Below, one piece after another: positions 30,238 through 56,179 of a stretch of 64,000 nt of DNA; the stretch's first letter is position 1, and the number at the start of each line of letters is the position of its first letter. Under the pieces are notes generated by a model. The model made no database searches. It was not told the origin of the DNA and saw nothing but the letters and a program-made list of their open reading frames with translations. The stretch lies in IMG/VR virus record IMGVR_UViG_3300012931_000759, positions 186,001-250,000 of that record; one strand, 5' to 3'. The translations under genes were made by a program, and so were the position numbers.

Positions 30238-31629
30238 ATGCAGGAACTACGTCTCAATTACGACGAATGGAAAGCGCTCATCGGCGCGTTGCCGATATTC
30301 TACATCGCGCTGGTTACGGGCTATCGAATCTGGGCGATCGGCAGCTCTTTCAGCATCGCGGCAGATATTTCATCCGCCGAGGATGTTGCCGATTTCGAGG
30401 CCACATACAAACCGACAGCCACTGCTGCTGGAAGCGCGGACGATGCCTTTCTCATGGGCTTGCTGGCCAACGGTGTTCCCTTTATCCACAAGGCAAGGGA
30501 AAATGTGGACGGCTACGCGCTGACTGAAATTGCGTCCCCATTGGATGAATACGGCAACCTAGCGGTGTCCATTCAACGGGCGGTCACTTTGACCGTACAA
30601 CTCGACGGCTACTCGGCGGGGCCCCTGCCTGTGATGGTAGTTTCGCCAAACCGCACCAAAACAAGCATCGACGGCTATTCTACCACCTTCGTCCCCGTGA
30701 AATTGGTTTCGCCGAATCGCGTGGGTACCAATATCGATGGGTACTCTGTTGGTCACATTCCAGTGAAACTGGTATCGCCCAACAGGATAGGAACAAGTGT
30801 GGACGGTTACTCTGTCGCGTTCACTCCAGTCAAGATCGTGTCGCCGAACAGAGTAAGCGTTAGTATCGACGGATATTCCATCTCACCATTGCCGGTCAAA
30901 CAGGGACCGAAAGCCGCCGGAATTGACGCTTGGCCTAATGTGCTATACGATGCGTCTGGAAACCCGGTCGGCGTTGTGCTTGACACAACGCTCTATCGCA
31001 TCCAGGCTGATGCCAAAGTGGCCAAGGGTGCTACATCGACATCACTTGTTCATTTGGACGCAATTGACACAGTCTCCGGACGCGGCAGACTCAAAGCGAC
31101 ACTCTATACTGAAAGCGGAGACGCTGTCTCTTTCGGCTCCGTGCCTCCGAATCCGAGTTCCATTCGCAACGATTTTGTCAGACACTCCGGTAGTGATTCG
31201 CTCCTAATAAATGGGAGTGTAACACCGGTCGTGTTCACCTACGATGCCTATGCGACTCTCGACATATCGATCCAGGAGATCAAGTTTACGCTAGTTGCTA
31301 ACTCGATCACATTTGGGTCCAACGCTTTTGGTGGCACAGTCGGTCCTCTGGCAAATGGTCTGCTGGTGGAGATAGTTGCTGGCGGCAACACGGGAACACT
31401 ATACAACCTAGTTCAGGATGAAAGTTTTGTGAACTTTGCCAGTCCAGGTGGTTTCAACTGGACCGTATCAAGCAAAGACATGATGAGTACTTCCTACTTG
31501 GTTGGTGGTGGACTCAGATTGCTGGCTGGTTCGGGCGATCAAGTGCGCGTGACCGTCAGGGACAACCTGACGGCCGCTGGCACATATTTCAAATGCTTTG
31601 TCAAGGGCAACCTGCTGCCGATTTCCTGA
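30238..31629 (+). CDS. Putative virion protein with DGY-containing 22-aa tandem repeats
   Basis: 6 DGY; beta-rich. Confidence 0.65.
   Translation: MQELRLNYDEWKALIGALPIFYIALVTGYRIWAIGSSFSIAADISSAEDVADFEATYKPTATAAGSADDAFLMGLLANGVPFIHKARENVDGYALTEIASPLDEYGNLAVSIQRAVTLTVQLDGYSAGPLPVMVVSPNRTKTSIDGYSTTFVPVKLVSPNRVGTNIDGYSVGHIPVKLVSPNRIGTSVDGYSVAFTPVKIVSPNRVSVSIDGYSISPLPVKQGPKAAGIDAWPNVLYDASGNPVGVVLDTTLYRIQADAKVAKGATSTSLVHLDAIDTVSGRGRLKATLYTESGDAVSFGSVPPNPSSIRNDFVRHSGSDSLLINGSVTPVVFTYDAYATLDISIQEIKFTLVANSITFGSNAFGGTVGPLANGLLVEIVAGGNTGTLYNLVQDESFVNFASPGGFNWTVSSKDMMSTSYLVGGGLRLLAGSGDQVRVTVRDNLTAAGTYFKCFVKGNLLPIS
30601..30900 (+). repeat. ~4.5 copies of a 66-bp/22-aa tandem repeat
   Basis: DGY codons start at 30604, 30670, 30736, 30802, 30868; unit DGYSxxxxPVKxVSPNRxxxx(I/V). 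Confidence 0.95.
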
Positions 31630-39382: not shown

Positions 39383-40273
39383 ATGGCGACAAGCTGCGAA
39401 ACCAGGACAGTGATCATCGGCCATTCCATTAACCTCGAGATCAAGGTGCTGAACGCGCTTGGCCAGCCCACGGATGCCGACAGTGCGCCATGGGTCGAGA
39501 TCAAGGACTCCAACGGAAGCACAGTGCGTCCGCTGTCGCCCTCGGGCGTCATACGTCTTGACACTGGCATGTACCAATTCACCTATGCGCCTTCTGGATC
39601 CGCTAGGACCGGTATCTGGACCGACCATTGGCGCGCCGTTGTGGATGGCTTTACCACGGACGCATCCCTACAGTTTATCGTGCTCAGCACGAATGCATCC
39701 ATCGACGTGGCCGGTCTCCAGATCGGCGACGCTCCCTGTAAAGTCTACAGCCAGGCGGAAATCGCGGGTATCAACATCCTGCTGGCGCAGCTGAAATGCC
39801 GCCTAAAGAACAACGCCAAGGCGGAAACCCTGGACGAGTACGGCCAGAAAACCTTTGTCGACTGCCCGATCTTCACTGACGATGAGCTACTGTGCTTCTT
39901 GAATAGCAGTCTCTCGGAGTTCAACCAGACGCCCCATTGGACTAGCTTCAGCTATGACAGTTCCATTATCTACGAGCGCAACGCCCATGTGGTTGTGGAG
40001 GGCGCGTACATTGTTGCTCTTGCTGCACAGATGCTGGTCGAGGCAGGACGAGAGTTTACGATTAATGACAATGGTATTAGCCTTTTGCCGCCTCCGTTGT
40101 CAACCACGATGAACAACCAGTTCGGCGCCTTGTTGACGGCGCATACAGAACGTCTGAAGTATATCAAATGTAGTATGAAACCCTCACCTGTAGGCGTAGG
40201 TACGCTAAGAGTGCTTGCAGTGTCTCCCGCATTTTTGAGATTGAGACATTTGCGGCAACGTCAAATCATTTAA
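39383..40273 (+). CDS. Putative head-tail connector/neck protein
   Basis: Ig-like N-terminus plus FTDDELLCFL...EFN..P helical adaptor-like domain. Confidence 0.6.
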   Translation: MATSCETRTVIIGHSINLEIKVLNALGQPTDADSAPWVEIKDSNGSTVRPLSPSGVIRLDTGMYQFTYAPSGSARTGIWTDHWRAVVDGFTTDASLQFIVLSTNASIDVAGLQIGDAPCKVYSQAEIAGINILLAQLKCRLKNNAKAETLDEYGQKTFVDCPIFTDDELLCFLNSSLSEFNQTPHWTSFSYDSSIIYERNAHVVVEGAYIVALAAQMLVEAGREFTINDNGISLLPPPLSTTMNNQFGALLTAHTERLKYIKCSMKPSPVGVGTLRVLAVSPAFLRLRHLRQRQII

Positions 40274-40774: not shown

Positions 40775-41260
40775 TTGGCTATGCCGATGTCGTCAGGCAC
40801 TTTCAGGGACATGGATCGCCGGGAACTGGTAAAGCGCATTCGCCGGGAATTGAAGAACGAAAAGGCTATCCTCGAGATCCTGGACAAGTACAATCTTGAT
40901 CCATCCATAATCGACCATGTGTCCATCAAGTTCGAGCCTCTGGATGTCTCGGCGAAAACTGTGGATGGCCACGTCATTCTCAACGAGAGGCTGCTTGATG
41001 GCGACTGGCGCGATATTGTCCGCTACGCAACCCACGAGTTGACCCATGTTGCACAACAGACCACCTCCGATATAGAAAAAACACAGGATCTCGATTACTT
41101 GGATGATCCTTATGAAAAAGAAGCTTTCCGGACACAAAGGAAAGTAATGGAGGAACTCTACGATCCGGAGGAAATACAGTCATATCTTGAAGGTTTGGTT
41201 GACCATCATGGTCTAAAAGGCAAGGAACGTCTCCGCAAGATCAGGGAATTGAAGCGGTAG
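40775..41260 (+). CDS. HEXXH zinc metallopeptidase-like protein (start possibly 40811)
   Basis: THELTHVAQ...PYEKEAF. Confidence 0.7.
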   Translation: MAMPMSSGTFRDMDRRELVKRIRRELKNEKAILEILDKYNLDPSIIDHVSIKFEPLDVSAKTVDGHVILNERLLDGDWRDIVRYATHELTHVAQQTTSDIEKTQDLDYLDDPYEKEAFRTQRKVMEELYDPEEIQSYLEGLVDHHGLKGKERLRKIRELKR

Positions 41261-41273
41261 GCTTAGGAGCACC

Positions 41274-43259
41274 ATGGCCGCCTTCACGAAGTTCATGCCC
41301 GCCCCAGGGCAAACGGGGGTTCCGCGAACCGCCGTGGTAGGGTTTACTATCCTGGACGAACCGAACGGCGTCCAGATAGACACGCTTGCCGTGTCGATGG
41401 ATGGCCAGCAGGCCATCTACGGGGGCGTCTTCGTGAACGGCTTCTCGGGCCGGATCTTCGCCGGATCCGGGACGCATGTGGTGGGCATCTATCCAAGAGG
41501 GCCAACATACCTGTCGGCCGCGACCGAGATCGACGTTGGCATCAGCGTCCTTGACGCCTACGACGCGGTTGACGCATACGATTACCAGTTCTACACCGCC
41601 GGGTTTGTGCCGCCGCCTCCGCCGCCCCCACCCCCTCCGGGCGGGAGAGCCTGCCTGACGGGAAGGCCCTCCTTTATCAGCAATAATGCAGGCCTTCAGG
41701 CCGCATTGGACCAAGGTACCGGAACCGAGGCCGCACTTTTGTGGAACGAAGCAGCTCCAAGCGACGAGAGCGATTTTGTCGTCTACAACATCTACCTCGC
41801 CACCAAGCGGGTCGATGTGTTCGGAGCGCCTCCTGGTTTTCTCGTAACGGCCCAACAGGCGACCATCGGAGGTCTGCCACCAGGCGACACGCGATACTTT
41901 GGGGTGCGCGCGTCCGAAGTTATACCGGCCGTGTCGAGCCTTGAGGGGTTGCGCCATGTCGGCCCAAACATGTATGCCTATCCATCGACGACTCTTGATG
42001 GGTATCTGCTGGATACCAATATGGCTCTCCAGGTGGCGTCAGTCGATGGTTTCCCCGAATTCGGCATCGTCGAGATCGAAACGGAGCTTGTCCGGTATCT
42101 GGAGCTGCGGCAATTCCCGCCAGCCTTGGTTACGGATGCTACGGGACGCGGATACCTTGGTACAATAGCTGCGTCGTATCCCTCCGGAACCCCGATTCTG
42201 CTGTGGCGGGGAAACGAGGACGGCAACACCATAATAGCCGAGGCAACTCCGACGTTCCAGAAGCAGAACTACGCCCTGACGCACGTGCTCGGGGATGGGT
42301 ATGGTCCGGACGGATACAGGGATGGGTACGACGGATACGCCCCGGCGGACGGGTATTTTTTTCCGCGCCAGGTCAAGCGCGACGACATCACGACTGACGG
42401 GAGCAACAACGACGCGCAAGGCGACTTCAACCGCTTTGACTACTGTGGAACTTGGCGTCGGCTAGCTCCGGTTGACTTTTGGAAGGGGCAGTGTAGCGGC
42501 AGCTATTTCGGCGGGGTTCAGCTCCGGGACGGCCAGCTTGTTCGCGCGAACAACATCCAGGACCAGATGCTCCAGCGCGAAGAGTTGCTGCTAGAGACGA
42601 CCGGGGAGCCGTTCGTCCTCATGCGGCGACTGTGGACTGGGATACGCTGTAGCTGCTTCATGCTACGGCGCGAGCATCCCGATGCGCGATGCCCGGTGTG
42701 TTTCAACACCGGATTCGTGACCGGCTACGAACAGTTCCTCAATCCGCGTAGGTCGGACGGGCGCATACTGGTTAGGGTCGACCCGGCGGTCGACAATCTG
42801 CTGATCGGGGACAAGGACGGGCTTACGCCCGACTACAAGCCAGGCAGCTGGACGATGGCGTTCCCGGCAATCAAGGACAGGGATGTACTGGTGCGGTTTA
42901 ATACCGATAACACTGAGGAATTCAGGTACGAAATCCTCGACGTAACCCGTGTGCGCGGTTTTTTTGCCCAATCGGGGGTACAGAAATTCAACATGCAACG
43001 GTTCCACAAAACGGACATCGTGTATCAGTGTGTGGTAACAAGGGATTTTTCCCCATATGCTGATACTTTGGTCACCGGTGTTGCCGCAGCCCCCGGAATA
43101 CAGCCACACACCCATTTGGTACATGTGCCACATGGTTCCAGCTTGGCACGGTTTAACGGAACTACATCCATAAACGCTGGTAGCGAAAGACACAGTCATG
43201 TGGTGAGGCAGGGCAAGGTCCAGATAGTTATCGGGCATACGCACACGCTGGCAGGATAA
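41274..43259 (+). CDS. Putative neck/head-closure protein with Ig/FN3-like domains
   Basis: Poly-Pro linker; TGEPFVL.RR..TG.RC.C...CPVC..TG; DRDVLVR...RYEI; 6 DGY. Confidence 0.6.
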   Translation: MAAFTKFMPAPGQTGVPRTAVVGFTILDEPNGVQIDTLAVSMDGQQAIYGGVFVNGFSGRIFAGSGTHVVGIYPRGPTYLSAATEIDVGISVLDAYDAVDAYDYQFYTAGFVPPPPPPPPPPGGRACLTGRPSFISNNAGLQAALDQGTGTEAALLWNEAAPSDESDFVVYNIYLATKRVDVFGAPPGFLVTAQQATIGGLPPGDTRYFGVRASEVIPAVSSLEGLRHVGPNMYAYPSTTLDGYLLDTNMALQVASVDGFPEFGIVEIETELVRYLELRQFPPALVTDATGRGYLGTIAASYPSGTPILLWRGNEDGNTIIAEATPTFQKQNYALTHVLGDGYGPDGYRDGYDGYAPADGYFFPRQVKRDDITTDGSNNDAQGDFNRFDYCGTWRRLAPVDFWKGQCSGSYFGGVQLRDGQLVRANNIQDQMLQREELLLETTGEPFVLMRRLWTGIRCSCFMLRREHPDARCPVCFNTGFVTGYEQFLNPRRSDGRILVRVDPAVDNLLIGDKDGLTPDYKPGSWTMAFPAIKDRDVLVRFNTDNTEEFRYEILDVTRVRGFFAQSGVQKFNMQRFHKTDIVYQCVVTRDFSPYADTLVTGVAAAPGIQPHTHLVHVPHGSSLARFNGTTSINAGSERHSHVVRQGKVQIVIGHTHTLAG

Positions 43260-43375
43260 AGGAAAACTTATGGGGTCGGATATGTGAAAGCCCGTACTAT
43301 TTTGACAGAACAAGGCGCGGCGGTTTCCGGGTGGGGTTGCCGCAATGAACGCTTACCGATGGAGGATTGCGCAAC

Positions 43376-46300
43376 ATGACATCTCAATACCCTGGAGCCA
43401 TCGATGGCTACCAGAACATAAGGATTGTCAGGGATTCCATCGATGAGGTTTTGGCGAAGGATCACAACGATAATCGCAGCGCTGTGGTGGCGATTGAGCA
43501 GTCGCTCGGGATCAGGCCCCAAGGTACCTATGGCACCGTCGTGGCGCGGCTAGACCAGGCCGACACGGATTTCGCCACGCATATCAACGGCATTGATTTC
43601 AGGCATGTGGCCGACCACATCGACTATCCGGGCAGCAGCCCGTCCTCTTTTGCCGACGGCTACATGCTGAGCCCGGCCAAGCTTGGCCGGACCGTCAGCG
43701 AAATAGTGGCAAGGATCGGAGCCTCTACTCCGGCGGGCGCGAGCGGAGCCGACAAAATCGGCATAACTCCCTACACCGACCCGTACTTCAAGTACTCGCA
43801 TCCCAGCGCCCAGGTCAGAGGCCAGATCCTCGGAATCCAGAACGACCTGGCAGAGAACGCCACATTACTTGAGCGCACCCTTGGGGCATTTGTGGTGGAT
43901 GGGATGGGGGTCACGGATCCATATGGTACCGGCAACATAGCGCGCGTGGCTGCCGGGCACATCGTGAGCGACGGGCGACTCCTGCGGTTCAATGGCGGAG
44001 ACCTGGCCGTACCTTCGGCCGGCAGTCCCACAATCTACTACGTCTACGCAGTGATCAACAATGGCAGCGTGTCGATCGGCATCGACGATGCCACCTTGCC
44101 CTCGATGGATCCCCTGAACCCGGCCGTGCTCCTGCGTAAGATTGTGCGTGACAGCGGCATCTGGGATTCCAATCTGTCGACAGACATTCGGCGCTATGGC
44201 ATGTTGGTGAACAGCAAGAATTTCTTCTCCGTGGGTAAGACGCCCTCCGGAGGAAAGGACGGCTACGGATGCGATTTCCTGTCCTTGAAGGCCGCCGTTG
44301 ACTATGTTAGGGCACTAACCCCCTCCAGCAAATTGATAGCGTCCTTGCGGATTGAGTTGGCAACCGACATCATCATCACCAGCGATTCCGAGCTTGAGAT
44401 TCTTATCGAAACAGATGGCCTGGTGATCGATGGCTGTGGAAAACGGGTTATTGCTACCACGGGGGTCAGCCACGCCCTTTTCAGCATCCAGGCAAACAAT
44501 GTCAAGATCGAGAACCTGACGCTTGTGTCTAATTGCTCAAGCCCTTTTCTGAGGTTTGCAGACCTTGGCACCACCAGCAGCGTAGATAACCTCCACATCA
44601 ACAACTGTGGAATCGACGCATATCCTGGCCAGGCATCCGGCGATATGTTCCTCCTGTTCGGAGAGACGACCGGTGCCCTTACTGTTTTTAACGCCTTCAT
44701 CACGGACAATATGGCAAACGTGGTGAACGGCGGAATCGTTTGCGCGGCTGTCAACCCGTACACCCAAGTTCTCCAGGACGCCAAGATCACCGGCAACATC
44801 ATCCAACAGCAAACGCTGGCTGCGGTTGCCTCGCCAGGAATCCAAGCATCGGTGAACTGCGTTGTGTCCGACAACCTCGTCATCGGAGGTTTTGTTAGCG
44901 GCATTTGTCTCAATGCGCCCGTGAATACAAGGGTGTCGAATAACGTCGTCCTTGGAACGGACTATTCGACCGTTGCTATGCCCACTGGAATCGCCATTTG
45001 GGTCCCCGGACCTTCTGGAAATGGGTATGGTGCCTTGGTCACACAAAACATTATCAGGGGAGTCAACAATTTCGGCATCGACAATAATGCCGGGGCGCAG
45101 GCTGGTCAACTGACGTTGATTGCGAACAACACTATCGATAACAGCAACATTTCTACATGGTCATACGGGGCGTTCGGCATCAATGTCTATAGTTACGAAG
45201 TTCCTGTCCTGGATAATAAGATAATTTGGATGGGATACCCAATCTACCAAGCCAACTATGTGGTTGGGAATGATATCTATGGTCACGGAATTGCGGCAGG
45301 TGACGGAATCTTATGCGTGCCGAGTTCCTCCAAGATACTAATTTGTAATAACCGCATTTACAATCTCGTCATAGATTATAATCTATATCCGACAGGCTCA
45401 GCCATCAATATAAATGGTACAGATCAGGCAGTAGTGTCCGGAAACGAAATCCAGAACTGTAGCGTTAGTGGGGGCGTATATCTGAACGCTGGCATTACGA
45501 TGGGTCGCGGCACGGAAGCAACAGTCCTAGGGAATGTGATTTCATACCCAACCATTGGAACAAATAACATGTTTGGTGTTTCAGACATTGGTGACAACTC
45601 GATTGTGTACGGCAACATAGTGACCAACCAACAGTATGGGGCTTTCTTTGTCAGTTCGGCCAATCATGTATCCTTTATTGGTAATAAGGTTTACAACTGC
45701 GGCGCGACAGGCATTGAGATGACGGATACTGCCGGAAGCATGGTTGTCGACAATCTCCTAGTCATCGATGATCCCACACTGAATCCAGGATCAGGTATCA
45801 ATGGCTTCTCCAGCAACTGCGTAGTAGCATCGAACATCGTAGTGGGATACGCGGCCGGAAGTTACGGTATCGCAGGCAACTTTGGCTCTTTCCGGTCGAC
45901 AGTCGTGGCCAATAATATGGTTCTTGGTCTACATGCTGACACCCAAGGCGCGATCATTATGGCTGGCGGATGGCGCGACATCTCCGTGGTTAATAATATC
46001 ATATGTAACACAAAGGGGTTTGGCATCGACATGACTGGTTCCGCTCGCAGTATTGTCTCGGGGAACCTACTGCTGGGAACGCCAACTGGTTCAGGATCTG
46101 GAATTGACAAGGTTGGGCAATATTCCGTGGTCGCTAACAATGCAATCCTCGAATACGGCAATGGCACCACTGGGTTCGGAATCAGCCTACTGGACGCCTA
46201 TTCCAGCGTGGTTATTGGCAATACGATTGCCGCCGGTCCCGACATGACCAAGGGTATTTATCTCGATGCTAATGTTGGATCCGTCGACAATCTGATCGCC

Positions 46301-47275
46301 GATAATATACTGAACGGTCTAGTGTATGTTGGAATAGACCTGGTCAGTCCAGCGGTAGCCGGTTACGGTGGCAGTTTCCGACACACCGTCGCAAACAATA
46401 TCGTCATCGGGACAAGCCAGAATAATAATGCGCCCGGCATCGAGAACGCGGCCAGTCAGTCGGTAGTGGTTGGAAACCATATTGTTTACCCGAACGGTGA
46501 GGGTATCCATGTGGTCGGGAACGGCGCCCTTGTGGGTAACAATAGCGTGATGGAGCCACAGGGACACGGTATCTATTTTTACGGTGGAACTGGAGTCACA
46601 ATCCTAAGTGGACTAGTTGTCGGCAACATTGTGTCCCAGAGCACAGAGAATGGAAGCGGAATTATAGTCGGAAACTCATGGGCTATCAGTATAACTGGTA
46701 ACTACGCGTACGGCTTCATTACCGGAATCTCCCTATGGCAGTTCGATGGTGGCTCCAGCATTGATTGTTCGGTTTGCGGAAATTATATCCTACAGGATCC
46801 AGTTGCCCCTGTAGGATATGCTGGCATCTATGCTGACACTACGTGTACAAGTCTCAGCATTGTGGGAAACTTCATCTTCGGATCTCAAATAGGTATCGAA
46901 TTGTTTTCCGGGGCTGTGCTAATTTCCTCGAATCAGATTGTGTGGCACAGGACTGTCGGTATTGAGGCTCATGGTATGGATGAGTTGTGTATCGTGAGCA
47001 ACTTAGTGGGTCCGCCATACCCGCTCACCCTCACAGCCGACGGCATCGATTTGACGGGGTGTATCAAAACATTGGTGGTAGGAAACCTTGCCTACGCGCA
47101 GAACATCCTCGGTTTTGGGTTTGGGACAAGTTTTGTTATCGACAGTTCGCAGCCCTCTGACGGTCTGGTGATGACTGGCAATCTCGGCAGGGCGGGTGCT
47201 GCCGCCCCATCGGACGGCGCTGGCGGAAACTGGTCGAGCGACTGGGTGATCGACGACTGTCGATGGATTTTCTAG
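43376..47275 (+). CDS. Right-handed beta-helix (pectin-lyase-like) spike/fibre protein
   Basis: Many (V/I).GN.I...GI repeats; N-terminal anchor shared with 49335; 3 DGY. Confidence 0.8.
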   Translation: MTSQYPGAIDGYQNIRIVRDSIDEVLAKDHNDNRSAVVAIEQSLGIRPQGTYGTVVARLDQADTDFATHINGIDFRHVADHIDYPGSSPSSFADGYMLSPAKLGRTVSEIVARIGASTPAGASGADKIGITPYTDPYFKYSHPSAQVRGQILGIQNDLAENATLLERTLGAFVVDGMGVTDPYGTGNIARVAAGHIVSDGRLLRFNGGDLAVPSAGSPTIYYVYAVINNGSVSIGIDDATLPSMDPLNPAVLLRKIVRDSGIWDSNLSTDIRRYGMLVNSKNFFSVGKTPSGGKDGYGCDFLSLKAAVDYVRALTPSSKLIASLRIELATDIIITSDSELEILIETDGLVIDGCGKRVIATTGVSHALFSIQANNVKIENLTLVSNCSSPFLRFADLGTTSSVDNLHINNCGIDAYPGQASGDMFLLFGETTGALTVFNAFITDNMANVVNGGIVCAAVNPYTQVLQDAKITGNIIQQQTLAAVASPGIQASVNCVVSDNLVIGGFVSGICLNAPVNTRVSNNVVLGTDYSTVAMPTGIAIWVPGPSGNGYGALVTQNIIRGVNNFGIDNNAGAQAGQLTLIANNTIDNSNISTWSYGAFGINVYSYEVPVLDNKIIWMGYPIYQANYVVGNDIYGHGIAAGDGILCVPSSSKILICNNRIYNLVIDYNLYPTGSAININGTDQAVVSGNEIQNCSVSGGVYLNAGITMGRGTEATVLGNVISYPTIGTNNMFGVSDIGDNSIVYGNIVTNQQYGAFFVSSANHVSFIGNKVYNCGATGIEMTDTAGSMVVDNLLVIDDPTLNPGSGINGFSSNCVVASNIVVGYAAGSYGIAGNFGSFRSTVVANNMVLGLHADTQGAIIMAGGWRDISVVNNIICNTKGFGIDMTGSARSIVSGNLLLGTPTGSGSGIDKVGQYSVVANNAILEYGNGTTGFGISLLDAYSSVVIGNTIAAGPDMTKGIYLDANVGSVDNLIADNILNGLVYVGIDLVSPAVAGYGGSFRHTVANNIVIGTSQNNNAPGIENAASQSVVVGNHIVYPNGEGIHVVGNGALVGNNSVMEPQGHGIYFYGGTGVTILSGLVVGNIVSQSTENGSGIIVGNSWAISITGNYAYGFITGISLWQFDGGSSIDCSVCGNYILQDPVAPVGYAGIYADTTCTSLSIVGNFIFGSQIGIELFSGAVLISSNQIVWHRTVGIEAHGMDELCIVSNLVGPPYPLTLTADGIDLTGCIKTLVVGNLAYAQNILGFGFGTSFVIDSSQPSDGLVMTGNLGRAGAAAPSDGAGGNWSSDWVIDDCRWIF

Positions 47276-47278
47276 GAG

Positions 47279-47635
47279 ATGGCGATCATGGAGAATATTT
47301 TTCTCGCCAAAAGGCTTTACAAAGACGGATATCAATTTGATGGTTATGAGGTGACTGAACATATCGACGGTTACCAGGTCAGCTCGGTTGTCTTGAATTC
47401 GTGTGATGTAGCTCGCTTGGAAAGGCACATGAGTAAGATAGAGTACATTGTTCGCAAAGCTGATGAAATTCCTGTACCACAGCGTTGCCAGGACTCTATG
47501 ATGGAGAAGCTGTACCAAAGCCTTGCCGGACAGGTTATTGCCTTGGAGCCGACTCGTTTCGCGCGTTTGAGGGAACTTCTTACAAAACACGCGGCACTCT
47601 ATGCCGCCATCAGCAATGCCGACGGCTACAAATAG
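47279..47635 (+). CDS. Small protein with four DGY motifs
   Basis: KDGYQFDGYE, IDGYQ, ADGYK*. Confidence 0.7.
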   Translation: MAIMENIFLAKRLYKDGYQFDGYEVTEHIDGYQVSSVVLNSCDVARLERHMSKIEYIVRKADEIPVPQRCQDSMMEKLYQSLAGQVIALEPTRFARLRELLTKHAALYAAISNADGYK

Positions 47636-48079: not shown

Positions 48080-48416
48080 TAGCAACGGGAGTTACAACGG
48101 CGTACAGTACCCATCGCGTAAATGGAAACTCGTCCTACTGGTCGTGATCCTGGCGACCATTGGCGCTTTTCTGCCGCCGCTCATCAGTGCGTGGCTGCTG
48201 GGTGCCGAGAAGCCTATGGTGCTTTTGTCCGGCACCGAGTGGGTCAGCGTGATCACCTTGAGCGTGAGCGCATATTTTGGTGCCAACGTCTGGCAGAAAC
48301 ATGTCAAGAAGAGGCACCAGCTGGACCTTGAGGCCAGCGGCGTCGTGGGCGATGCGACCGAGCCGGCGGGCGGCGACGACGACAAGGAAGAGGACGACAG
48401 TGGAAAAGAGGCCTGA
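48069..48416 (+). CDS. Holin-like membrane protein
   Basis: SRKW followed by two hydrophobic helices and a charged C-terminus. Confidence 0.55.
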   Translation: MKDNSNGSYNGVQYPSRKWKLVLLVVILATIGAFLPPLISAWLLGAEKPMVLLSGTEWVSVITLSVSAYFGANVWQKHVKKRHQLDLEASGVVGDATEPAGGDDDKEEDDSGKEA

Positions 48417-49335
48417 GACGGGCGTATCGCCAATGGAAATTTGTTCTGTGTGCGGACGGGAGAGGCGCGTCCATACAAGAAAAGATGGATTGCCAATATG
48501 TAAGGTCTGTAGACAAAAAGAGAAGAGACGGCAAAACACAGTATCCTGTGGTCGATGTGGCAGGATGAGACGATCACACTATGGGTTTTGCGCCGAATGC
48601 CTCAAAGTAGTCAGGCGCCAACAGGAGAAGTGCGCCATATGTAATGGCGAACCGGTGTATGTGAAACATGTGTGCCGATCATGCTACGACAAACAATGGC
48701 GAGCAAACAGACCGGAAATCATATGCGCATCTTGTGGGCGGATTTGCTTAGATTCCTCGCACAGGGCGCAGGGACGACCACTTTGTGTGGCGTGCTTTGT
48801 CGCCTTGCGAGTTGGGATATGCGTCGGCTGTGGCGTTGAATCACGAATTGCGAAAAGGTTGTTTGACGGCTCCATATGGTGTTGGAAATGCTACCGTCGA
48901 CACAGGTCAAAAAAGCGCTGTGACATATGTGGGATGGATGGTTTGCTCGCAATCTCCAACCCTCCCATATGTCATCAATGCTATGCGAGGGAATACAACC
49001 GCAGACCGGAAGTGTGCGCGCGCAAAGCATCGGATCTTGCGCAACGGCGGCTGATGAATGCGGATGGCAACTTTACCGCCGAGGAGTGGTTGGCGACAAT
49101 GCGCTCATGGGATTGGAGATGCGCATACTGTAGTGAAAGGCTGACAAGGAAAAACCGCTCCACGGATCACATTGTGCCTTTGACTAGGGGAGGTTCGAAC
49201 AATGCGGACAATATTGTGCCATGTTGCCGCAGCTGTAACTCCCGCAAGAACAATCGCCTGCTGTCGGAATGGTTGGCATCAGAGGACTGCGGGCGCACAT
49301 TGATACGAATTGCCGATCATCGGAGGACGGACTAA
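48400..49335 (+). CDS. HNH endonuclease with multiple CxxC repeats (start 48400 or 48433)
   Basis: CAYC...DHIVPLTRGG.N...NIVPCCRSCNSRK. Confidence 0.85.
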   Translation: MEKRPETGVSPMEICSVCGRERRVHTRKDGLPICKVCRQKEKRRQNTVSCGRCGRMRRSHYGFCAECLKVVRRQQEKCAICNGEPVYVKHVCRSCYDKQWRANRPEIICASCGRICLDSSHRAQGRPLCVACFVALRVGICVGCGVESRIAKRLFDGSIWCWKCYRRHRSKKRCDICGMDGLLAISNPPICHQCYAREYNRRPEVCARKASDLAQRRLMNADGNFTAEEWLATMRSWDWRCAYCSERLTRKNRSTDHIVPLTRGGSNNADNIVPCCRSCNSRKNNRLLSEWLASEDCGRTLIRIADHRRTD

Positions 49336-52300
49336 TGTCCAACTCGAAATACCCCAATGGCCTCGACACCGATGCCGAGTTGCCGCGAGTAGATGATGCG
49401 ATCACAGAAATCGGAGGTTTGGCTATCGACAGCCTCCGATCCGCCGTCTTCGCGATCGAGAAGGCTCTCGGCGTGAAACCGCAGGGAACGGCCGCCGACC
49501 TTGCCGGTCGGCTTGGCATGTCCCTCGACGCCAACGGCCACATCAAAGCCTCCGCCCTCTCGGGCATAGGGCTGGTGACCCTTCCGATCACTAATACACA
49601 GGTCGGCTCGGCCGCCGGCATCGAGGAGTCCAAACTCGACCTGAATTACGGCACTACCCTGCTCAAATCGTGGATCGATAGTCTCAGGGTTCGTGTGGAC
49701 GCGTTGGAGGTGACAGTTGCGACCACCATCGCACACTTTGCTGCGCATGTTACCAGTCCGTCGGTCTGGGGGCGGCACAGGACCAGCGACATCGATGCCT
49801 ATGATGTCTTCGCGGGTATGAACGCCCAAGGTGCCCTGACCAACCTCGACACGAGATTGAAGGCTCATATTGCGGATCTTGTCGACGCCCACGACGGCAG
49901 CGCAATCTCCCTCGACGCCAGTCGCTTTTCCTCGATCACTGCAACCGATGTCCAGTCGGGCGCCGAGCAGCTCGAAGCTCTACAATTGGTGGAAATCGTC
50001 CGTCACCGCGACCGGCATCACGGAAATGGGATACTTGGAACACAGGACGCCTTCCTGGCCGGAACCAGCCACGGCGAGGTGCTCATTGCCGCCTCGGCGA
50101 CAACCGCCGCCTCGATCGGGAATGGCTTCATCAAGTTCGCAGTGGCGCCCAGCGCGCCCGCCTTCCAATCTATCTCGAAAAACGACCGAATCGATTTCGT
50201 GAGCGCCGGAGGGAAAACCTACACTTTTGTCATTAGTGGCACACAGAGTACGAACCAGGTCAATATCTTCGGCTCTATGCCTGTGTCCGGGGTTGGAACC
50301 GCAACGGTGTACAAGACTGCCGAAGAGACCTTGGAGCCCTCCGTGGCTATGGTCTGTATGCGCCAGGATACACTGTCGCCGCGGCCGTCTACTCTACAGA
50401 TTGTCCACCCGTCCTCCCCCTTCATCATGAGTTCAGGCTTTCGCGGAAGCGACCTTTCGGCATCGGCTGCGAACATCCGACTGCTGTACCCCAACCAAGA
50501 CGGAAGTGGGGATACCGGCAACCTGGATGTGTACGCCGCCATGGCTGCGTTCTCGGCCGTCAAAAGCACCTGGACTGTCGAGAACATCGCCAGGACGATC
50601 AATTCTCAGCTATTCTCACCGGGCATCGGATTACCAAGATATCCGTTGGTTGCGTTTGCCTACAAGGGTGAACTTACCTTTGCCTTTGACGCGCCCGGCG
50701 CCGACGGCTATGTCGAGATCGGTGTGCCTACCGCTAACGATGCCACGAGCACTCTCGGATTTGTGTCCGGCACGAAAGAATATGCGCGTTCTTCGCGCGA
50801 TCTCTATATCGATGGATATGAGATCACTTCGGTCTCTAAACTTTTGGACGCTTACGGCCAGATTACGGCCTCCGATACAATCACCTTTACGTCCGTTAAT
50901 CTGCTCGCACTCGGCGTTAAATCGGGGCATTTGGCAAGAATCACACCATATCACAAGGGCACATATGTCATAAGTGACGTCACATCAAGCACAATTGTCT
51001 TCGACAGCGCGAACGAGCACGACTTCACCAGTTCGCCCAGCGCGCTGAACAAGCAGATCAGAGTTATAGTATATGCGGACGCCTTCTCCGTCAGCACAAC
51101 TCCTACCCAACACACATTGTACGAGGTTTTCCTCGACGGCTATGACGACGGGTATGGACCAGTGGCTGGGCTCAAGGCCTCGCCAAGAGTTGGGTATTTC
51201 GACACACCTGCTGCCCCAGGATCAGCGCTCAAAGATATCTTGGATGTGAAAGCTGTATCTCGCACTTTTGGAACGGCTTCCAGGCGTGTGTTTTTTGACT
51301 ACTCCGCGCGAACGATGGTTCTCGGCAACCCGATCACCGGCCCTTCCATCTTAAGCCTAGGTGCCAAGGTTACAATGCCTTCCTCAAGTGGAGAGGGATT
51401 TAGGTTCACCCTATATGATACCAACGGCGTGGATTACTTGGAACTTGAAGTGGCAAGTGGCCTCCCTGGCAGCGATGGTTACATGGACGTTTCCGTGTAT
51501 TCCCGTATCAGCGAGGAGCGTTTCCTACAAGTTGCAACCGTCCTACATGACGGGACCGCGTTCCAACACCTCGACGACAATAGGCAGTTCGGGAACGTAG
51601 GACGCCAGGACGTCCGTGATGATTTTACCCGCGACTACGTGTCTTATCCGCGCTCCCTACTGCGCGGCAATGGGGTCATCTACGGTTTTGTGGTCACCGG
51701 CAATGGAACGGGGACTTTGGCCGTCACGGGCGGTCAATGCTTGGTTGATGGTCAACTCAAATCCGTCGGCAAGACTTCGTTCACTATTCCTCTCGACGGG
51801 GCCACGGTGAACTATAACTTGTTCATGGACAGGGATGGCGTTCTGCGACTCATGCGGGACGACTATTTTGCCTCAGGCGTCTTGTCCACGCCTTCCACAG
51901 CTGAGTTGCTGACTAGCAGAACCGAGACCATGCTTGCCAAGGTGGAGGTAAGTGTCGCAAACACCATTACCACCATCATCGATCTCCGAAGGTTTGTTAA
52001 CGATATTGATAGTAAACTCGACCTGTTAGTTGAGGAAAACAGCATCACCCATGGCTCTTTCGCCAGCCTGAAGGCCGCCACGGACTATCTGAATAGTCTA
52101 CCATCCTCGACCGCCTGCTCCAGACGCATCAGGGTGCGCGGAGAGGTTTTCCTGTCCGAGAGCATCAGTATACCGAGGAACACGGAACTTGTGGGCGATG
52201 GGTACGGATCGGGCGGAACCTCGAATCGCAGCGCGCGCATTACATACTTGACCACCAACGCTGCTATACAAGGTAATGACGGCCTGGTCATCAGGGATTT

Positions 52301-53906
52301 GGCCTTTTTCCGAAGCGCGAATTTGCCCAATGGTTTCATCTACATGGTGAATCCATTCTCCTACCTTACGGTTGAAGGATGTACTTTCGAGTTCGGAACT
52401 GCCGACGTCAATAATAATGTCATGGTATTCGAGGCTAGCCTATCCTATGCGACGATCCGGGAGAATGTTTTCCGCAATGTTGCAACTGCTATCCAAGGGC
52501 AGAGTTTGGTCAACTACAGCAAAATTGACAACAACATTTTCGATAACTCTGACGGCACCAATGGTGTGTTTGTCAATGGCGTGTATATGAACCAAGCCTA
52601 TGACGTCAGCATCTCTGGAAACACCATGCGTGTCGCGTCTGCCGCGATGGCAGCCGGCACCGCTTTCGTCCGTCTTGGTGCTGGCAGCGGCATTGTCCAT
52701 TTTGTATGGATCATGGACAATTTTTTATTGTACTACGGAACACAGACTCCCGTAGCCAATATGGCCATGATTGATGTGAATGGAGCCAGCGTCAACACAC
52801 TTGAACTACTGATTGAACGGAACTTTCTGGCAAACACGTTTTCCAATACCGGTTTTGCAGTGGGTATTCTGTGCGCCCCGACCAGTTCGACAGCAACTGA
52901 TGTGACTGTACAGAACAACCATCTTTTCTACTTCTCGACCGTGAGTGTCGGGAAAGGCATTGTGCTGGGAAACTGCCCCTCGGCGATTGTCTCGGGCAAT
53001 GTACTGATCAGTTGCCGCAGTTCGTTCAATATTACGGGCAATGCAGACCAATTTATCTTGGCAAATAACATCGTCCGGAACGGAATTGCGGAAGCTCTCG
53101 ATACAACTTCCTGTACTAGCACTGGTATGAGTGTGCTAGGAAACCGCTTCAGCACCGATGGAACCGGTTATAACTGTTCGTTCTATCCTACCATTGATTC
53201 CGCTACAGTGTGCGGAAACATGTTTACATTCACCGGATCTTCTGGATACTCCTTGATGTTTCATTCCGGCACCAACTTCGTCATCCAAGGTAATCAATTC
53301 CTAGGCACTGTGTTTACAGTGTTTCCACAGTTGTTCATGAATGCGAACAACAACCTGGTGATGGGTAATATTCTTCGGGGAACTCCGCCAGTCGGCAGCT
53401 CCAGGATCTACGACGGCGGCACAGGCAATATCGAGATGCTCAACAAAGGACAGACATACACCGTGTGGGTATCACCTAATCGCGCAGTGTTTGCCTCCCA
53501 GTGGGCTATGGACATCAATAGCGGCTACAGCGGCTTTATCTCGCAGATTTCCGCGACAACCACAACCACCAACAACGAGGCTGCTTTTGACTTCTCAGCG
53601 CTCGATCTTCCTGCCGGGGCGCAATTGGACAAGGTTACGGTCTGGTACGGCAACTCGGGAGCAACTGGCGACATTACGTTCCAATTGTTCACGACGGACA
53701 TTTCCACCGTTACATCCACGGCTATCAGTTTAGTTGTGGATGCGGTAGCAACCGGAGGATTCCCTGCTTCGATTGATGTCACGCCCACTTCGACACATTA
53801 CATCCCTGCTGGAGGAACACAGTGGGACTCGCTGGTTGCTGTTGGAAAGAACGGAACCTCCTTCCTGAAGATAGTCTTCGGGATAAAGATAACATACATA
53901 CTGTAG
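49335..53906 (+). CDS. Large virion fibre/spike protein with C-terminal beta-helix
   Basis: GGAGG RBS; SKYPNGLD...SAVFAIEKALG anchor; beta-helix repeats; 6 DGY. Confidence 0.75.
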   Translation: MSNSKYPNGLDTDAELPRVDDAITEIGGLAIDSLRSAVFAIEKALGVKPQGTAADLAGRLGMSLDANGHIKASALSGIGLVTLPITNTQVGSAAGIEESKLDLNYGTTLLKSWIDSLRVRVDALEVTVATTIAHFAAHVTSPSVWGRHRTSDIDAYDVFAGMNAQGALTNLDTRLKAHIADLVDAHDGSAISLDASRFSSITATDVQSGAEQLEALQLVEIVRHRDRHHGNGILGTQDAFLAGTSHGEVLIAASATTAASIGNGFIKFAVAPSAPAFQSISKNDRIDFVSAGGKTYTFVISGTQSTNQVNIFGSMPVSGVGTATVYKTAEETLEPSVAMVCMRQDTLSPRPSTLQIVHPSSPFIMSSGFRGSDLSASAANIRLLYPNQDGSGDTGNLDVYAAMAAFSAVKSTWTVENIARTINSQLFSPGIGLPRYPLVAFAYKGELTFAFDAPGADGYVEIGVPTANDATSTLGFVSGTKEYARSSRDLYIDGYEITSVSKLLDAYGQITASDTITFTSVNLLALGVKSGHLARITPYHKGTYVISDVTSSTIVFDSANEHDFTSSPSALNKQIRVIVYADAFSVSTTPTQHTLYEVFLDGYDDGYGPVAGLKASPRVGYFDTPAAPGSALKDILDVKAVSRTFGTASRRVFFDYSARTMVLGNPITGPSILSLGAKVTMPSSSGEGFRFTLYDTNGVDYLELEVASGLPGSDGYMDVSVYSRISEERFLQVATVLHDGTAFQHLDDNRQFGNVGRQDVRDDFTRDYVSYPRSLLRGNGVIYGFVVTGNGTGTLAVTGGQCLVDGQLKSVGKTSFTIPLDGATVNYNLFMDRDGVLRLMRDDYFASGVLSTPSTAELLTSRTETMLAKVEVSVANTITTIIDLRRFVNDIDSKLDLLVEENSITHGSFASLKAATDYLNSLPSSTACSRRIRVRGEVFLSESISIPRNTELVGDGYGSGGTSNRSARITYLTTNAAIQGNDGLVIRDLAFFRSANLPNGFIYMVNPFSYLTVEGCTFEFGTADVNNNVMVFEASLSYATIRENVFRNVATAIQGQSLVNYSKIDNNIFDNSDGTNGVFVNGVYMNQAYDVSISGNTMRVASAAMAAGTAFVRLGAGSGIVHFVWIMDNFLLYYGTQTPVANMAMIDVNGASVNTLELLIERNFLANTFSNTGFAVGILCAPTSSTATDVTVQNNHLFYFSTVSVGKGIVLGNCPSAIVSGNVLISCRSSFNITGNADQFILANNIVRNGIAEALDTTSCTSTGMSVLGNRFSTDGTGYNCSFYPTIDSATVCGNMFTFTGSSGYSLMFHSGTNFVIQGNQFLGTVFTVFPQLFMNANNNLVMGNILRGTPPVGSSRIYDGGTGNIEMLNKGQTYTVWVSPNRAVFASQWAMDINSGYSGFISQISATTTTTNNEAAFDFSALDLPAGAQLDKVTVWYGNSGATGDITFQLFTTDISTVTSTAISLVVDAVATGGFPASIDVTPTSTHYIPAGGTQWDSLVAVGKNGTSFLKIVFGIKITYIL

Positions 53907-56098: not shown

Positions 56099-56116
56099 CT
56101 ATCAATAAACATGTAT
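56099..56116 (+). promoter_or_regulatory. Putative phage late promoter for the tail operon
   Basis: CTATCAAT AAACATG TAT. Confidence 0.65.
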
Positions 56117-56179
56117 CAGACCAAGGAAGGGCGCATCTGCGTCAGTTACGACAATTTTGCCGCCTGGAGGACTCAACCG

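What the first reader, a model, noticed from the sequence alone, without database searches (positions are those of the whole stretch)
42294..42356. Five DGY motifs in 21 residues in a neck-protein linker
Seen: DGYGPDGYRDGYDGYAPADGY, with irregular spacing and mixed codons; the same protein has LDAYDAVDAYDY, and 49335 has LDGYDDGYG. Dense irregular clustering fits a short linear motif better than a fold requirement. This is the strongest local evidence for the DGY hypothesis.
Basis: partly seen in the sequence, partly recalled or inferred. Interest (0 to 1): 0.65.

Follow-up and report, generated by a model that had tools for sequence, protein, structure and literature searches.

The report
DGY motif loop in phage neck protein
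A loop with five Asp-Gly-Tyr triplets in the neck protein of an uncultured 340-kb phage is the densest local case of a motif that is 8-13 times over-represented in the neck, tail and fibre proteins of a whole clade of huge phages; the motif is under selection, the protein fold does not need it, and its role is unknown.

Summary
Window 42294-42356 encodes DGYGPDGYRDGYDGYAPADGY in a 661-aa ORF (41274-43259, + strand). Residues ~422-589 of that ORF fold like solved phage neck stopper proteins.

The segment is a low-confidence loop between two short strands. It is not a variable linker: DGYGxDGYRDGYDGY...DGY is kept down to ~47% identity, encoded with different synonymous codons.

The cluster is part of something larger.
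- DGY is by far the most over-represented tripeptide in this phage: 105 seen, 13.7 expected, z 24.6.
- The same holds in 72 related loci with GC 27-57%: 1124 seen, 85 expected.
- The motif is strictly D-G-Y (E, N, F and W are not accepted) and has no flanking context.
- It sits in neck, sheath-periphery, baseplate and fibre proteins, never in head or tube proteins.

Distant relatives keep the stopper fold with one DGY or none, and they also lack the genome-wide excess. So the motif is selected for itself and is not a fold requirement.

The mechanism is open. My leading guess (~0.3) is a Tyr-directed modification sequon. The rivals are multivalent docking, a turn or clamp structural motif, and metal binding. 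I found no writer or reader gene and no literature on the motif.

The parts
42294..42356 (+). DGY cluster: five Asp-Gly-Tyr triplets in 21 residues (aa 341-361). It is a loop inserted between two short beta-strands.
   Evidence: sequence; conserved core DGYGxDGYRDGYDGY...DGY; coil, pLDDT 55-68; synonymous codon variation across homologues; no tandem DNA repeat
41274..43259 (+). 661-aa neck protein. It has an N-terminal Ig-like domain, a poly-Pro stretch, an FN3 domain, the DGY loop, a stopper (head-closure) beta-barrel and a C-terminal His-rich domain. It carries six DGY in all.
   Evidence: more than 200 homologues on contigs up to 460 kb; FN3/Ig; neck stopper fold; PHROG 38102 virion structural protein
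42537..43040 (+). Stopper / head-closure beta-barrel domain (aa ~422-589).
   Evidence: phage 812 neck 8q01_S Z 9.9, FCWL1 9.1, phiCD508 8.4, Pam3 8.4, T4 gp13/gp14 entry Z 6.7; the top 24 rows are all phage neck proteins. Foldseek E 3.6e-4 to the phage 812 neck.
41994..42011 (+). Isolated DGY (aa 242-244, LDGYLL) in a confidently folded domain, in a loop after strand 238-241. It is present in 40 of 98 homologues.
41550..41585 (+). LDAYDAVDAYDY: a D-x-Y tract at the end of the N-terminal Ig-like domain. Homologues have DAY, DSY or DGY here.
42648..42701 (+). Invariant CxC...CxxC (C459, C461, C473, C476). It is also kept in DGY-free relatives.
43107..43250 (+). Three invariant HxH motifs (H612/614, H640/642, H655/657) in a beta-rich C-terminal domain.
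39383..40273 (+). 296-aa protein conserved upstream of the stopper in 62 loci. By position it is adaptor-like. It has 0 DGY.
   Evidence: In Tunturi_5 the corresponding neighbour is annotated head-tail connector.
40775..41260 (+). 161-aa HExxH protein with an eCIS-core (DUF4157) domain, conserved next to the stopper in 67 loci. It has 0 DGY.
43367..47275 (+). 1302-aa right-handed beta-helix protein (3 DGY). Likely a neck- or tail-attached fibre or spike.
47279..47635 (+). 118-aa protein with four DGY, the densest in the genome at 3.4 per 100 aa. It lies between the two beta-helix genes. No family was found.
   Evidence: A similar small DGY-tract protein occurs in another genome (L104).
49269..53906 (+). 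1545-aa beta-helix protein with six DGY, including LDGYDDGYG at 51132-51158.
56111..58708 (+). Tail sheath with three DGY at aa 91, 169 and 451. All lie outside the conserved sheath core (aa 561-863).
30238..31629 (+). 463-aa protein with six DGY, four to five of them in 22-aa repeats (VSPNRxxTxIDGYSxxxxPVKxV).
17147..18172 (+). Major head protein, given as contrast. It has no DGY, like the rest of the head module.

Best explanation
What is shown. The 21-residue tract is a conserved, surface-type loop in the neck stopper protein of an uncultured huge myophage. It is the densest local display of a clade-wide tripeptide motif, strictly Asp-Gly-Tyr. Selection maintains about 60-100 copies of this motif per genome on peripheral parts of neck, sheath, baseplate and fibre proteins, and none on head or tube proteins. 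The stopper fold does not need the motif.

What is inferred. DGY acts as a recognition element and not as a building block. Stoppers solved so far form six-fold rings, so the neck would display about 30 copies.

The mechanism I commit to as the single most likely. DGY is a sequon for a covalent modification of the tyrosine, most plausibly cytoplasmic O-glycosylation by one of the phage's own glycosyltransferases. The Asp at -2 would serve enzyme recognition, as in the bacterial D/E-X-N-X-S/T sequon. The Gly would give an accessible turn. The sequon would accumulate on exposed tail surfaces in the way glycosylation sequons accumulate on viral surface proteins.

Probabilities: selected non-fold recognition motif ~0.6; specifically a Tyr modification sequon ~0.3.
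For: Enrichment: 105 seen vs 13.7 expected in the genome, next tripeptide z 6.9. 105 in-frame copies against 18 out-of-frame sense, 10 antisense and 5 intergenic. 1124 vs 85 in 72 related loci with GC 27-57%, ranking first in most loci. Whole genomes 4.1-7.6x, against 1.7x in a distant relative.
Specificity: EGY 0.7, NGY 0.7, DAY 1.5, DGF 1.2, DGW 0.7; no flanking context. So the Asp carboxylate and the Tyr hydroxyl both matter.
Not fold-bound: 5, then 1, then 0 DGY at this site in progressively more distant stoppers that keep the other conserved motifs, in step with the genome-wide trait. Each of 98 family members has 4-12 DGY, but partly at non-homologous columns. In the same orthologous families, DGY-rich genomes hold more copies than G005.
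Location: outside the conserved cores of stopper, sheath and gp6-like wedge. Low-pLDDT coil. Dense tracts recur in unrelated tail proteins of other genomes. Short-range pairing is above chance, 15 vs 6.6 +/- 2.3.
Protein-level purifying selection: identical peptide, different synonymous codons.
Means for glycosylation: a cluster of large glycosyltransferases plus sugar-nucleotide enzymes at 278-300 kb, with similar clusters in close relatives.
The D at -2 analogy to the PglB sequon rests on established knowledge, not on a test made here.
Against: There is no direct evidence of any modification. No Tyr sequon of this form is known to me, and none was found in the literature. The two large glycosyltransferases do not co-vary with the trait: one is missing from DGY-rich complete genomes and the other's conserved part is present in DGY-poor ones. 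The gene-content comparison singled out no enzyme. Glycosyltransferases in huge phages may serve DNA or polysaccharide. The near-invariant spacing of the neck tract, and hydrophobic residues at -1 and +1 of many isolated sites, also fit a structural or interface role. Capsid proteins carry none, which a general protective glycan coat would not predict.
Confidence: 0.3

Rival explanations
1. Multivalent non-covalent docking code. DGY triplets are low-affinity 'stickers', read by an unidentified domain or by each other. They would hold fibres, neck collar, sheath surface and baseplate periphery together, for example by docking neck-attached beta-helix fibres or stowing fibres along the tail. This would work like the tandem DPF/NPF tripeptides of endocytic adaptors.
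For: Tandem arrays with 0-3 residue spacers lie in low-confidence loops. The motif occurs on exactly those parts that touch each other outside the capsid. Two large beta-helix genes directly follow the stopper, here and in relatives. Small DGY-tract proteins sit between fibre genes. No writer enzyme was found. An engineered peptide built largely of DGY units forms coacervates with a Lys/Tyr-rich partner (PMC12648293); this is an analogy only.
Against: No reader domain was identified. Many isolated DGY sit in turns of folded beta domains, where linear-motif docking is less usual. The homo-oligomer prediction gave no answer, which is not evidence either way.
Confidence: 0.25
2. Structural motif. 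D-G forms a tight turn (an Asx-turn or type I' hairpin) and the Tyr hydroxyl makes a 'tyrosine-corner'-like or inter-subunit hydrogen bond. The clade's peripheral beta-domains and fibres would be built from diverged modules that all use this clamp. The neck tract would be ordered only in the assembled ring.
For: The last DGY of the tract starts a predicted strand and is nearly invariant across both subfamilies. Isolated sites often have hydrophobic neighbours. Some sites lie in recognisable repeats: the 22-aa repeats and the KVKVRVDDxADGYLH modules. The region 325-420 is highly conserved yet poorly modelled as a monomer, as is usual for neck parts that order on assembly. Tyrosine corners show that a fold motif can demand Tyr and reject Phe (established knowledge).
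Against: DGYDGY and DGYxDGY tracts cannot each be a hairpin turn. Homologous stoppers fold without the tract. Positions move while copy number is kept. About 85% of sites have unrelated contexts. Head proteins and tail proteins of related phages, which are equally beta-rich, have none. N-G, which is at least as good a turn, is at background.
Confidence: 0.25
3. Metal or cation site. Asp and Tyr at i and i+2 give hard oxygen ligands, for example for Fe(III) or Ca(II). This would be the oxygen-ligand counterpart of the HxH iron and zinc sites of phage fibres and spikes, repeated along oligomer axes.
For: The i/i+2 geometry matches HxH. The same protein carries three invariant HxH motifs and a Cys4 motif. 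The strict need for Asp and Tyr fits ligand chemistry. Restriction to tail and fibre proteins parallels HxH use in T4 gp37/gp12 and P2 gpV (established knowledge).
Against: The middle residue is strictly Gly, whereas it is free in HxH. There is no DxDxDG-type context. The tract is Gly/Pro-rich and predicted as coil, not a beta-helix. The stopper ring is six-fold. There are no metal data.
Confidence: 0.1

Closest known systems
Phage neck stopper / head-closure proteins (phage 812 stopper, SPP1 gp16-type, T4 gp14)
   Same: Residues ~422-589 share the beta-barrel fold (Z up to 9.9; the top 24 matches are all neck proteins). The gene lies between an adaptor-like gene and the terminator-like and sheath genes.
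   Different: This protein is three to six times longer. It adds an N-terminal Ig-like domain, a poly-Pro stretch, an FN3 domain, the DGY loop, a Cys4 insertion and a C-terminal 3 x HxH domain. None of the solved stoppers was matched over the DGY segment.
HxH metal-binding motifs of phage fibres and spikes (T4 gp37 and gp12, P2 gpV, phi92 gp138)
   Same: Both are very short i/i+2 motifs, repeated and restricted to tail and fibre proteins. HxH motifs occur in this same protein.
   Different: The ligand residues would be Asp and Tyr, and the middle residue is fixed as Gly. The motif occurs in loops and tracts, not along a beta-helix axis. Metal binding is untested.
Bacterial protein-glycosylation sequons (PglB D/E-X-N-X-S/T; Bacteroidetes D-S/T-A/I/L/V/M/T)
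   Same: Both are three- to five-residue motifs with an acidic residue one or two places before the acceptor. Both are enriched on surface proteins, have no further context, and move in position during evolution.
   Different: The acceptor would be Tyr. Phage assembly is cytoplasmic. No cognate transferase was identified, and no modification has been shown.
Tandem tripeptide docking motifs (DPF/DPW and NPF in endocytic adaptors)
   Same: These are tripeptides present in many copies, often in tandem in poorly ordered segments, that act through multivalency.
   Different: They are eukaryotic and cytosolic, and their reader domains are known. Here no reader is known, and many copies lie within folded domains.
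Tyr/Gly/Asp-rich adhesive or elastic low-complexity peptides (mussel foot protein 5 derivatives, resilin repeats)
   Same: The composition is similar. The engineered peptide in PMC12648293 is built largely of DGY units.
   Different: Those are long low-complexity proteins or designed peptides, whose function depends on Dopa or dityrosine chemistry. Here the tract is a 21-residue conserved loop, plus many single sites.
Virion glycosylation in mycobacteriophages, chloroviruses and mimivirus (from established knowledge)
   Same: These viruses encode their own sugar-nucleotide and glycosyltransferase sets and decorate structural proteins. This genome has such a set.
   Different: The known sites are Ser/Thr or Asn, and capsids are included. 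Here the capsid has no motif, and no link between the transferases and DGY was found.

Membership tests
Phage neck stopper / head-closure protein | Beta-barrel fold shared with solved stoppers | tested here: met
   8q01_S Z 9.9 (142 aligned residues), 9jlf_C 9.1, 9gb5_G 8.4, 8hdr_A 8.4. The first 24 rows are all neck proteins, covering aa 422-589.
Phage neck stopper / head-closure protein | Gene position between the head-tail adaptor and the tail terminator and sheath | tested here: met
   the conserved 296-aa and 161-aa genes lie upstream, and the 252-aa gene and the sheath (PHROG 279) lie downstream. In Tunturi_5 the homologue lies between 'head-tail connector' and 'tail terminator'.
Phage neck stopper / head-closure protein | Assembles as a ring under the portal-adaptor | tested here: inconclusive
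   the three-copy prediction returned 'no answer'. This needs cryo-EM.
Intrinsically disordered linker | Low structural confidence and low sequence conservation | tested here: not met
   pLDDT is 55-68 and the segment is coil, but the sequence is among the best conserved in the protein.
Recent tandem DNA repeat (slippage low-complexity) | Repeated DNA units of high identity | tested here: not met
   no tandem repeat; codons differ between copies and between homologues.
DNA-level motif (binding, restriction or packaging site) | Conserved nucleotides independent of reading frame | tested here: not met
   Third codon positions are free. 105 copies are in frame against 33 elsewhere. The excess holds from 27 to 57% GC.
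EF-hand / DxDxDG calcium loop | Asp at -2 and -4 of the DG | tested here: not met
   Asp at -4, -3 and -2 is only 1.3x, 1.5x and about 1x.
HxH-type metal site of phage fibres | Two ligand side chains at i and i+2, with bound metal | not testable with these tools
   The geometry is formally present (D, Y). There are no metal data. The C-terminal HxH motifs are present in the sequence.
Protein glycosylation sequon | A cognate transferase that co-occurs with the motif | tested here: inconclusive
   Glycosyltransferase clusters are present in G000-G003, but the two large transferases do not track the trait across 23 genomes. Other transferases were not traced.
Protein glycosylation sequon | A mass shift on the acceptor residue | not testable with these tools
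   This needs mass spectrometry of virions or recombinant protein.
Beta-hairpin turn / tyrosine-corner structural motif | The same local conformation and hydrogen bond at all sites, required for folding | tested here: inconclusive
   Only two models were possible. One site starts a strand, one lies in an inter-strand loop, and four lie in a coil tract. Homologues fold without the tract.

The most novel reading that the evidence does not exclude
DGY is the recognition code of an undescribed system that marks the outside of the tail machine in a large, wholly uncultured clade of huge phages. It would be either a tyrosine-directed protein modification with a three-residue sequon, or a self- or reader-recognised docking code that wires neck, sheath, baseplate and fibres together. 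About 100 copies per genome are kept by selection, and the motif has been lost together in some lineages.
Probability: 0.5. Interest if true: 0.9.

Novelty: new variant of a known kind. Interest (0 to 1): 0.74.

Why it matters
A strict tripeptide that is enriched 8-13 fold in the tail and neck proteins of hundreds of huge-phage contigs implies a shared biochemical process in virion assembly or function. It is independent of GC content and of protein family, and it is absent from related phages. No such process has been described. If it is a sequon, it would reveal a new protein modification, with a ready-made sequence tag and a predictable substrate list. If it is a docking code, it would explain how very large tails attach many non-homologous fibres, and it would give a handle for engineering them. 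In either case it is a simple sequence marker for this clade and for its tail-surface proteins, most of which have no annotation. It also turns an 'ORFan' problem into a testable one using a 21-residue peptide.

Tried and rejected
- DNA-level or compositional origin: rejected. Frame and strand specificity, free third codon positions and the GC range of 27-57% all speak against it.
- Recent repeat expansion: rejected.
- EF-hand-like calcium loop: rejected, because there is no DxDxDG context.
- Diversity-generating retroelement product: considered and rejected. The sites are conserved, and the Gly codons include GGA and GGG.
- Fold requirement of the stopper: rejected for the tract, because homologues lack it.
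- Pfam and PHROG scans on the 661-aa protein gave nothing for the tract.
- A profile search of solved structures gave only FN3 hits and a chance match to an antibody CDR.
- Foldseek on the full model returned only Ig/FN3 hits, so the C-terminal half was folded separately.
- Glycosyltransferase co-occurrence: GT2 and DegT counts looked suggestive in five genomes. The two large transferases then failed to track the trait in 23 genomes.
- Gene-content comparison of four DGY-rich genomes against one DGY-poor genome gave 16 candidates, including an M24 peptidase, a WGR-PARP, a sigma factor and S21. The DGY-poor genome shares only 25 proteins with all the others, so the list is not specific.
- ESM Atlas look-up of the 118-aa DGY-rich protein gave no usable hit.
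- Complex prediction with three copies of residues 332-661 returned 'no answer'. This is not evidence for or against self-association.
- Literature searches for the motif found nothing relevant apart from one engineered peptide.
- Records behind L001 and L003 are not held, so they could not be scanned whole.
- Not used: read laying and the look-up of sequencing runs (not needed); the large representative protein search (the word search already gave more than 200 homologues); any alternative genetic code (all ORFs are open under table 11).
Full report
OBSERVATION. The window is bases 186001-250000 of a single 340,392-bp virus record with 55.7% GC. ORF 41274..43259 (+, 661 aa) contains DGYGPDGYRDGYDGYAPADGY at residues 341-361. 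This is exactly window 42294-42356, and the codons are mixed at all three positions. From genome composition, about 0.003 DGY are expected in 21 residues; five are seen. There is no tandem DNA repeat.

WHAT THE PROTEIN IS. Pfam finds nothing, and PHROGs gives only 'virion structural protein' for aa 439-492. A word search found more than 200 homologues, all from metagenomes. Many lie on contigs of 300-460 kb, and some carry inteins.

- An AlphaFold2 model built on 98 sequences has mean pLDDT 85.
- The N-terminal part is Ig-like plus FN3.
- The C-terminal half, folded separately, matches phage neck stopper / head-closure proteins: phage 812 neck Z 9.9, FCWL1 9.1, phiCD508 8.4, Pam3 8.4, and the T4 gp13/gp14 entry 6.7. 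The top 24 rows are all neck proteins and cover aa 422-589.
- Gene order agrees. A conserved 296-aa gene and a 161-aa eCIS-core/HExxH gene lie upstream. Two beta-helix proteins, a conserved 252-aa gene, the sheath and a tube-like gene lie downstream.
- In the cultured Tunturiibacter phage Tunturi_5, the weak homologue gp322 sits between 'head-tail connector' and 'tail terminator'.

So 'neck protein' is right. The DGY tract is modelled as a coil of pLDDT 55-68 between strands 335-339 and 360-364, about 60 residues before the barrel. It is a loop insertion more than a linker.

CONSERVATION. In the ~660-aa subfamily the consensus VLxDGYGxDGYRDGYDGY-(3 to ~25 residues)-DGY holds down to ~47% identity. 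Homologues encode the same peptide with different synonymous codons at every position. The last DGY (D359, G360, Y361) is nearly invariant in both subfamilies.

The ~530-aa subfamily (35-41% identity) keeps only that one DGY at this site. It has further DGY at non-homologous columns: near its N-terminus, as DGYDGY in another loop insertion, and as ADGY before the barrel. Every one of the 98 members has 4-12 DGY.

A GENOME-WIDE AND CLADE-WIDE PHENOMENON. A crude ORF call on the genome (106,070 aa) gives 105 DGY against 13.7 expected, which is 7.7x with z 24.6. The next tripeptide, PPP, has z 6.9.

- Frame: of all GAYGGNTAY 9-mers, 105 are in frame, 18 are out of frame on the sense strand, 10 are antisense and 5 are intergenic.
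- Distribution: the copies lie in only 33 ORFs.
- Related loci: in 83 loci fetched from IMG/VR and other sources (GC 27-57%) there are 1155 DGY against 95 expected, and DGY ranks first in most loci. Pooled over the 72 enriched loci, the count is 1124 against 85, or 13.2x.
- Whole records: these show 50-165 copies on the coding strand against about 5-40 for the reversed control pattern.
- Five fully fetched genomes give ratios of 7.6, 5.7, 5.3, 4.9 and 4.1, against 1.7 for the distant G005, where DGY ranks 99th.
- Eleven distant loci show no enrichment.
- Tunturi_5 (GC 58%) shows no enrichment either. It has no DGY at all in ~5,300 aa of neck, tail and head proteins.

Composition and my gene caller are therefore not the cause.

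PROPERTIES OF THE MOTIF.
- It is strict. Ratios in the pooled set are EGY 0.7, NGY 0.7, DAY 1.5, DSY 1.1, DGF 1.2, DGW 0.7 and DGH 0.8. In this genome alone DAY is 2.1x.
- There is no flanking preference beyond about 2x.
- About 85% of the sites in this genome have unrelated contexts. The rest lie in recognisable repeats.
- Sites pair at short range more often than chance: 15 gaps of 12 residues or fewer, against 6.6 +/- 2.3 expected.
- Dense tracts recur in unrelated tail-module proteins of other genomes. Examples are DGYTDGYSDGYDGYSDGYRDGY in a 1254-aa protein, a 3641-aa protein with 57 DGY, and a 156-aa protein resembling the window's 118-aa ORF with four DGY.

WHERE IT IS AND IS NOT. The major head protein (17147-18172), the protein with the head-protease domain and every other ORF of the head module have no DGY and no DAY. 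So do the tube-like protein and a 1585-aa protein that may be the tape measure.

The motif is in the stopper and in the sheath, where it lies at aa 91, 169 and 451, outside the conserved core at 561-863. It is in a gp6-like baseplate wedge, where it lies outside the conserved N-terminal 255 aa. It is also in the beta-helix proteins and in many large unannotated tail-module proteins.

Within the same orthologous families, DGY-rich genomes carry more copies than G005: stopper 4-7 against 1, a 955-aa protein 5-10 against 3, sheath 1-3 against 1, and the 252-aa protein 1 against 0.

THE NATURAL EXPERIMENT. Stopper homologues from non-enriched phages align through the flanking conserved motifs (FDxCG, GSYxGG, QREExLL) and the CxC..CxxC motif. 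At the tract they have a single DGY (L046, L049/L050) or none ('DQE' in L056/L058/L066; none in Tunturi_5 gp322). The local cluster therefore rises and falls with the genome-wide trait, and the fold does not need it.

SEARCH FOR A WRITER OR READER. Bulk Pfam scans show that the genome encodes many proteostasis and translation genes, a WGR-PARP with an ADP-ribosylglycohydrolase, and PrkA/SpoVR/DUF444. At 278-300 kb there is a cluster of large glycosyltransferases (GT4; GT1-like plus GT2; GT47-like) with sugar-nucleotide enzymes.

Close relatives have similar clusters, and G005 has a single GT2 and no DegT. Across 23 genomes, however, the 1149-aa transferase is confined to the nearest relatives. 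The conserved part of the 756-aa protein also occurs in DGY-poor genomes.

A gene-content comparison set four DGY-rich genomes against G005. It yielded 16 candidates, among them an M24 peptidase just after the DGY-richest fibre genes, the PARP, a sigma factor and S21. G005 shares only 25 proteins with all the others, so the list has no power. No writer or reader is identified.

Literature searches found no description of the motif. The only hit was an engineered mussel-protein-inspired peptide built largely of DGY units, which forms coacervates.

INTERPRETATION.
- Shown: the tract is real, old and under protein-level purifying selection. It lies in a neck stopper protein. It belongs to a strict tripeptide motif that is selected on peripheral parts of tail and neck proteins across a large uncultured clade. 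The stopper fold does not require the motif.
- Inferred: it is a recognition element.
- The mechanism I rank first (~0.3) is a Tyr-directed modification sequon. The reasons are the chemically specific need for Asp and Tyr, the lack of context, the positional turnover at constant copy number, the exposed locations, the analogy of an acidic residue at -2 in the bacterial N-glycosylation sequon (established knowledge), and the presence of phage glycosyltransferases.
- Against it: there is no co-varying enzyme, no precedent for a Tyr sequon of this form, and no motif on the capsid.
- Multivalent docking (~0.25) explains the tandem tracts, the set of proteins involved and the small DGY-tract proteins, but it lacks a reader.
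- A turn or clamp structural motif (~0.25) explains the invariant last DGY and the hydrophobic neighbours. It does not explain the tracts, the turnover or the DGY-free homologues.
- A metal site analogous to HxH (~0.1) is chemically attractive but has no support.

The complex prediction returned no answer and is not used as evidence.

COMPARISON AND NOVELTY. The protein is a new, much enlarged member of the neck stopper family. As far as these searches reach, the motif phenomenon has no described counterpart. The nearest known kinds are glycosylation sequons, tandem tripeptide docking motifs and the HxH motifs of phage fibres. I file it as a new variant of a known kind (a short recognition motif on virion proteins). 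If a dedicated writer or reader exists, it would be a new system.

LIMITS.
- The gene calls are crude (longest ORFs), and related loci share orthologues, so the pooled counts are not independent.
- Only two structure models were possible.
- All relatives are metagenomic.

Noticed in passing
window 40775-41260 (+) and 34290-35834 (+): A 161-aa HExxH protein with an eCIS-core/DUF4157 domain is conserved next to the stopper in 67 loci. An AAA+ ATPase with proteasomal-ATPase OB domains lies in the same tail module. In eCIS, DUF4157 marks cargo that an AAA+ protein loads into the tube, so this phage may load a cargo-like protein in a similar way.
   Followed up: partly
window 42648-42701 and 43107-43250 (+): The stopper carries an invariant CxC...CxxC motif and three invariant HxH motifs on predicted beta-strands. 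Six His residues in one chain could form one octahedral metal site, resembling in a single chain the HxH sites of trimeric fibres.
   Followed up: no
homologues P0015, P0038, P0040, P0049, P0051, P0053 and others: About a dozen stopper homologues are ~1080 aa long and carry intein/Hint and LAGLIDADG domains inserted in the protein.
   Followed up: no
genome 35644-37122 (L085:17003-18478) and elsewhere: The phage encodes a WGR-PARP_reg-PARP catalytic protein, an ADP-ribosylglycohydrolase, NAD synthase and NAPRTase. The PARP is shared with three of the four DGY-rich genomes compared and is absent from G005.
   Followed up: partly
genome ~278-300 kb (L098:12796-18527, L099): This cluster holds large multi-domain glycosyltransferases (756 aa GT4; 1149 aa GT1-like plus GT2; GT47-like), a DegT aminotransferase, epimerases/dehydratases and methyltransferases. 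A tubulin/FtsZ-like gene follows at ~300 kb.
   Followed up: partly
genome, regions covered by alignments A4-A7: The genome has the gene set typical of huge phages: IF3, RF1, EF-Ts, ribosomal protein S21, peptide deformylase, Cpn60, DnaJ, HSP20, Lon, two ThiF/E1-like proteins, a PrkA/SpoVR/DUF444 trio, two TnpB-like (Cas12f1-like TNB) genes and several homing endonucleases.
   Followed up: no
window 48277-49335 (+): A 352-aa ORF is very rich in CxxC pairs and ends in an HNH nuclease motif. It overlaps the start of the 1545-aa beta-helix ORF.
   Followed up: no
window 30238-31629 (+): Four to five consecutive 22-aa repeats (VSPNRxxTxIDGYSxxxxPVKxV) each carry one DGY, at a 66-nt period.
   Followed up: partly
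L103:1493-12415 (-), L102:3964-7725 (-), L104:2988-3455 (-): Other genomes of the clade hold a 3641-aa protein with 57 DGY, and proteins with tracts of five to eight DGY separated by 0-3 residues.
   Followed up: partly
L197 (Tunturiibacter phage Tunturi_5, PP885688.1 246199-286573): This cultured 309-kb phage has a stopper-like gp322 in the same neck context but no DGY in its neck, tail or head proteins. It is useful as a negative control in experiments.
   Followed up: yes
window 43367-43560 and 49269-49560 (+); 28714-30234 aa 117-184: The two beta-helix proteins and a third protein share an N-terminal ~60-aa segment (...A.E..LG..PQG...). In the third protein this segment matches the N-terminus of PHROG tail-fibre families. 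It is probably the virion-attachment domain.
   Followed up: no
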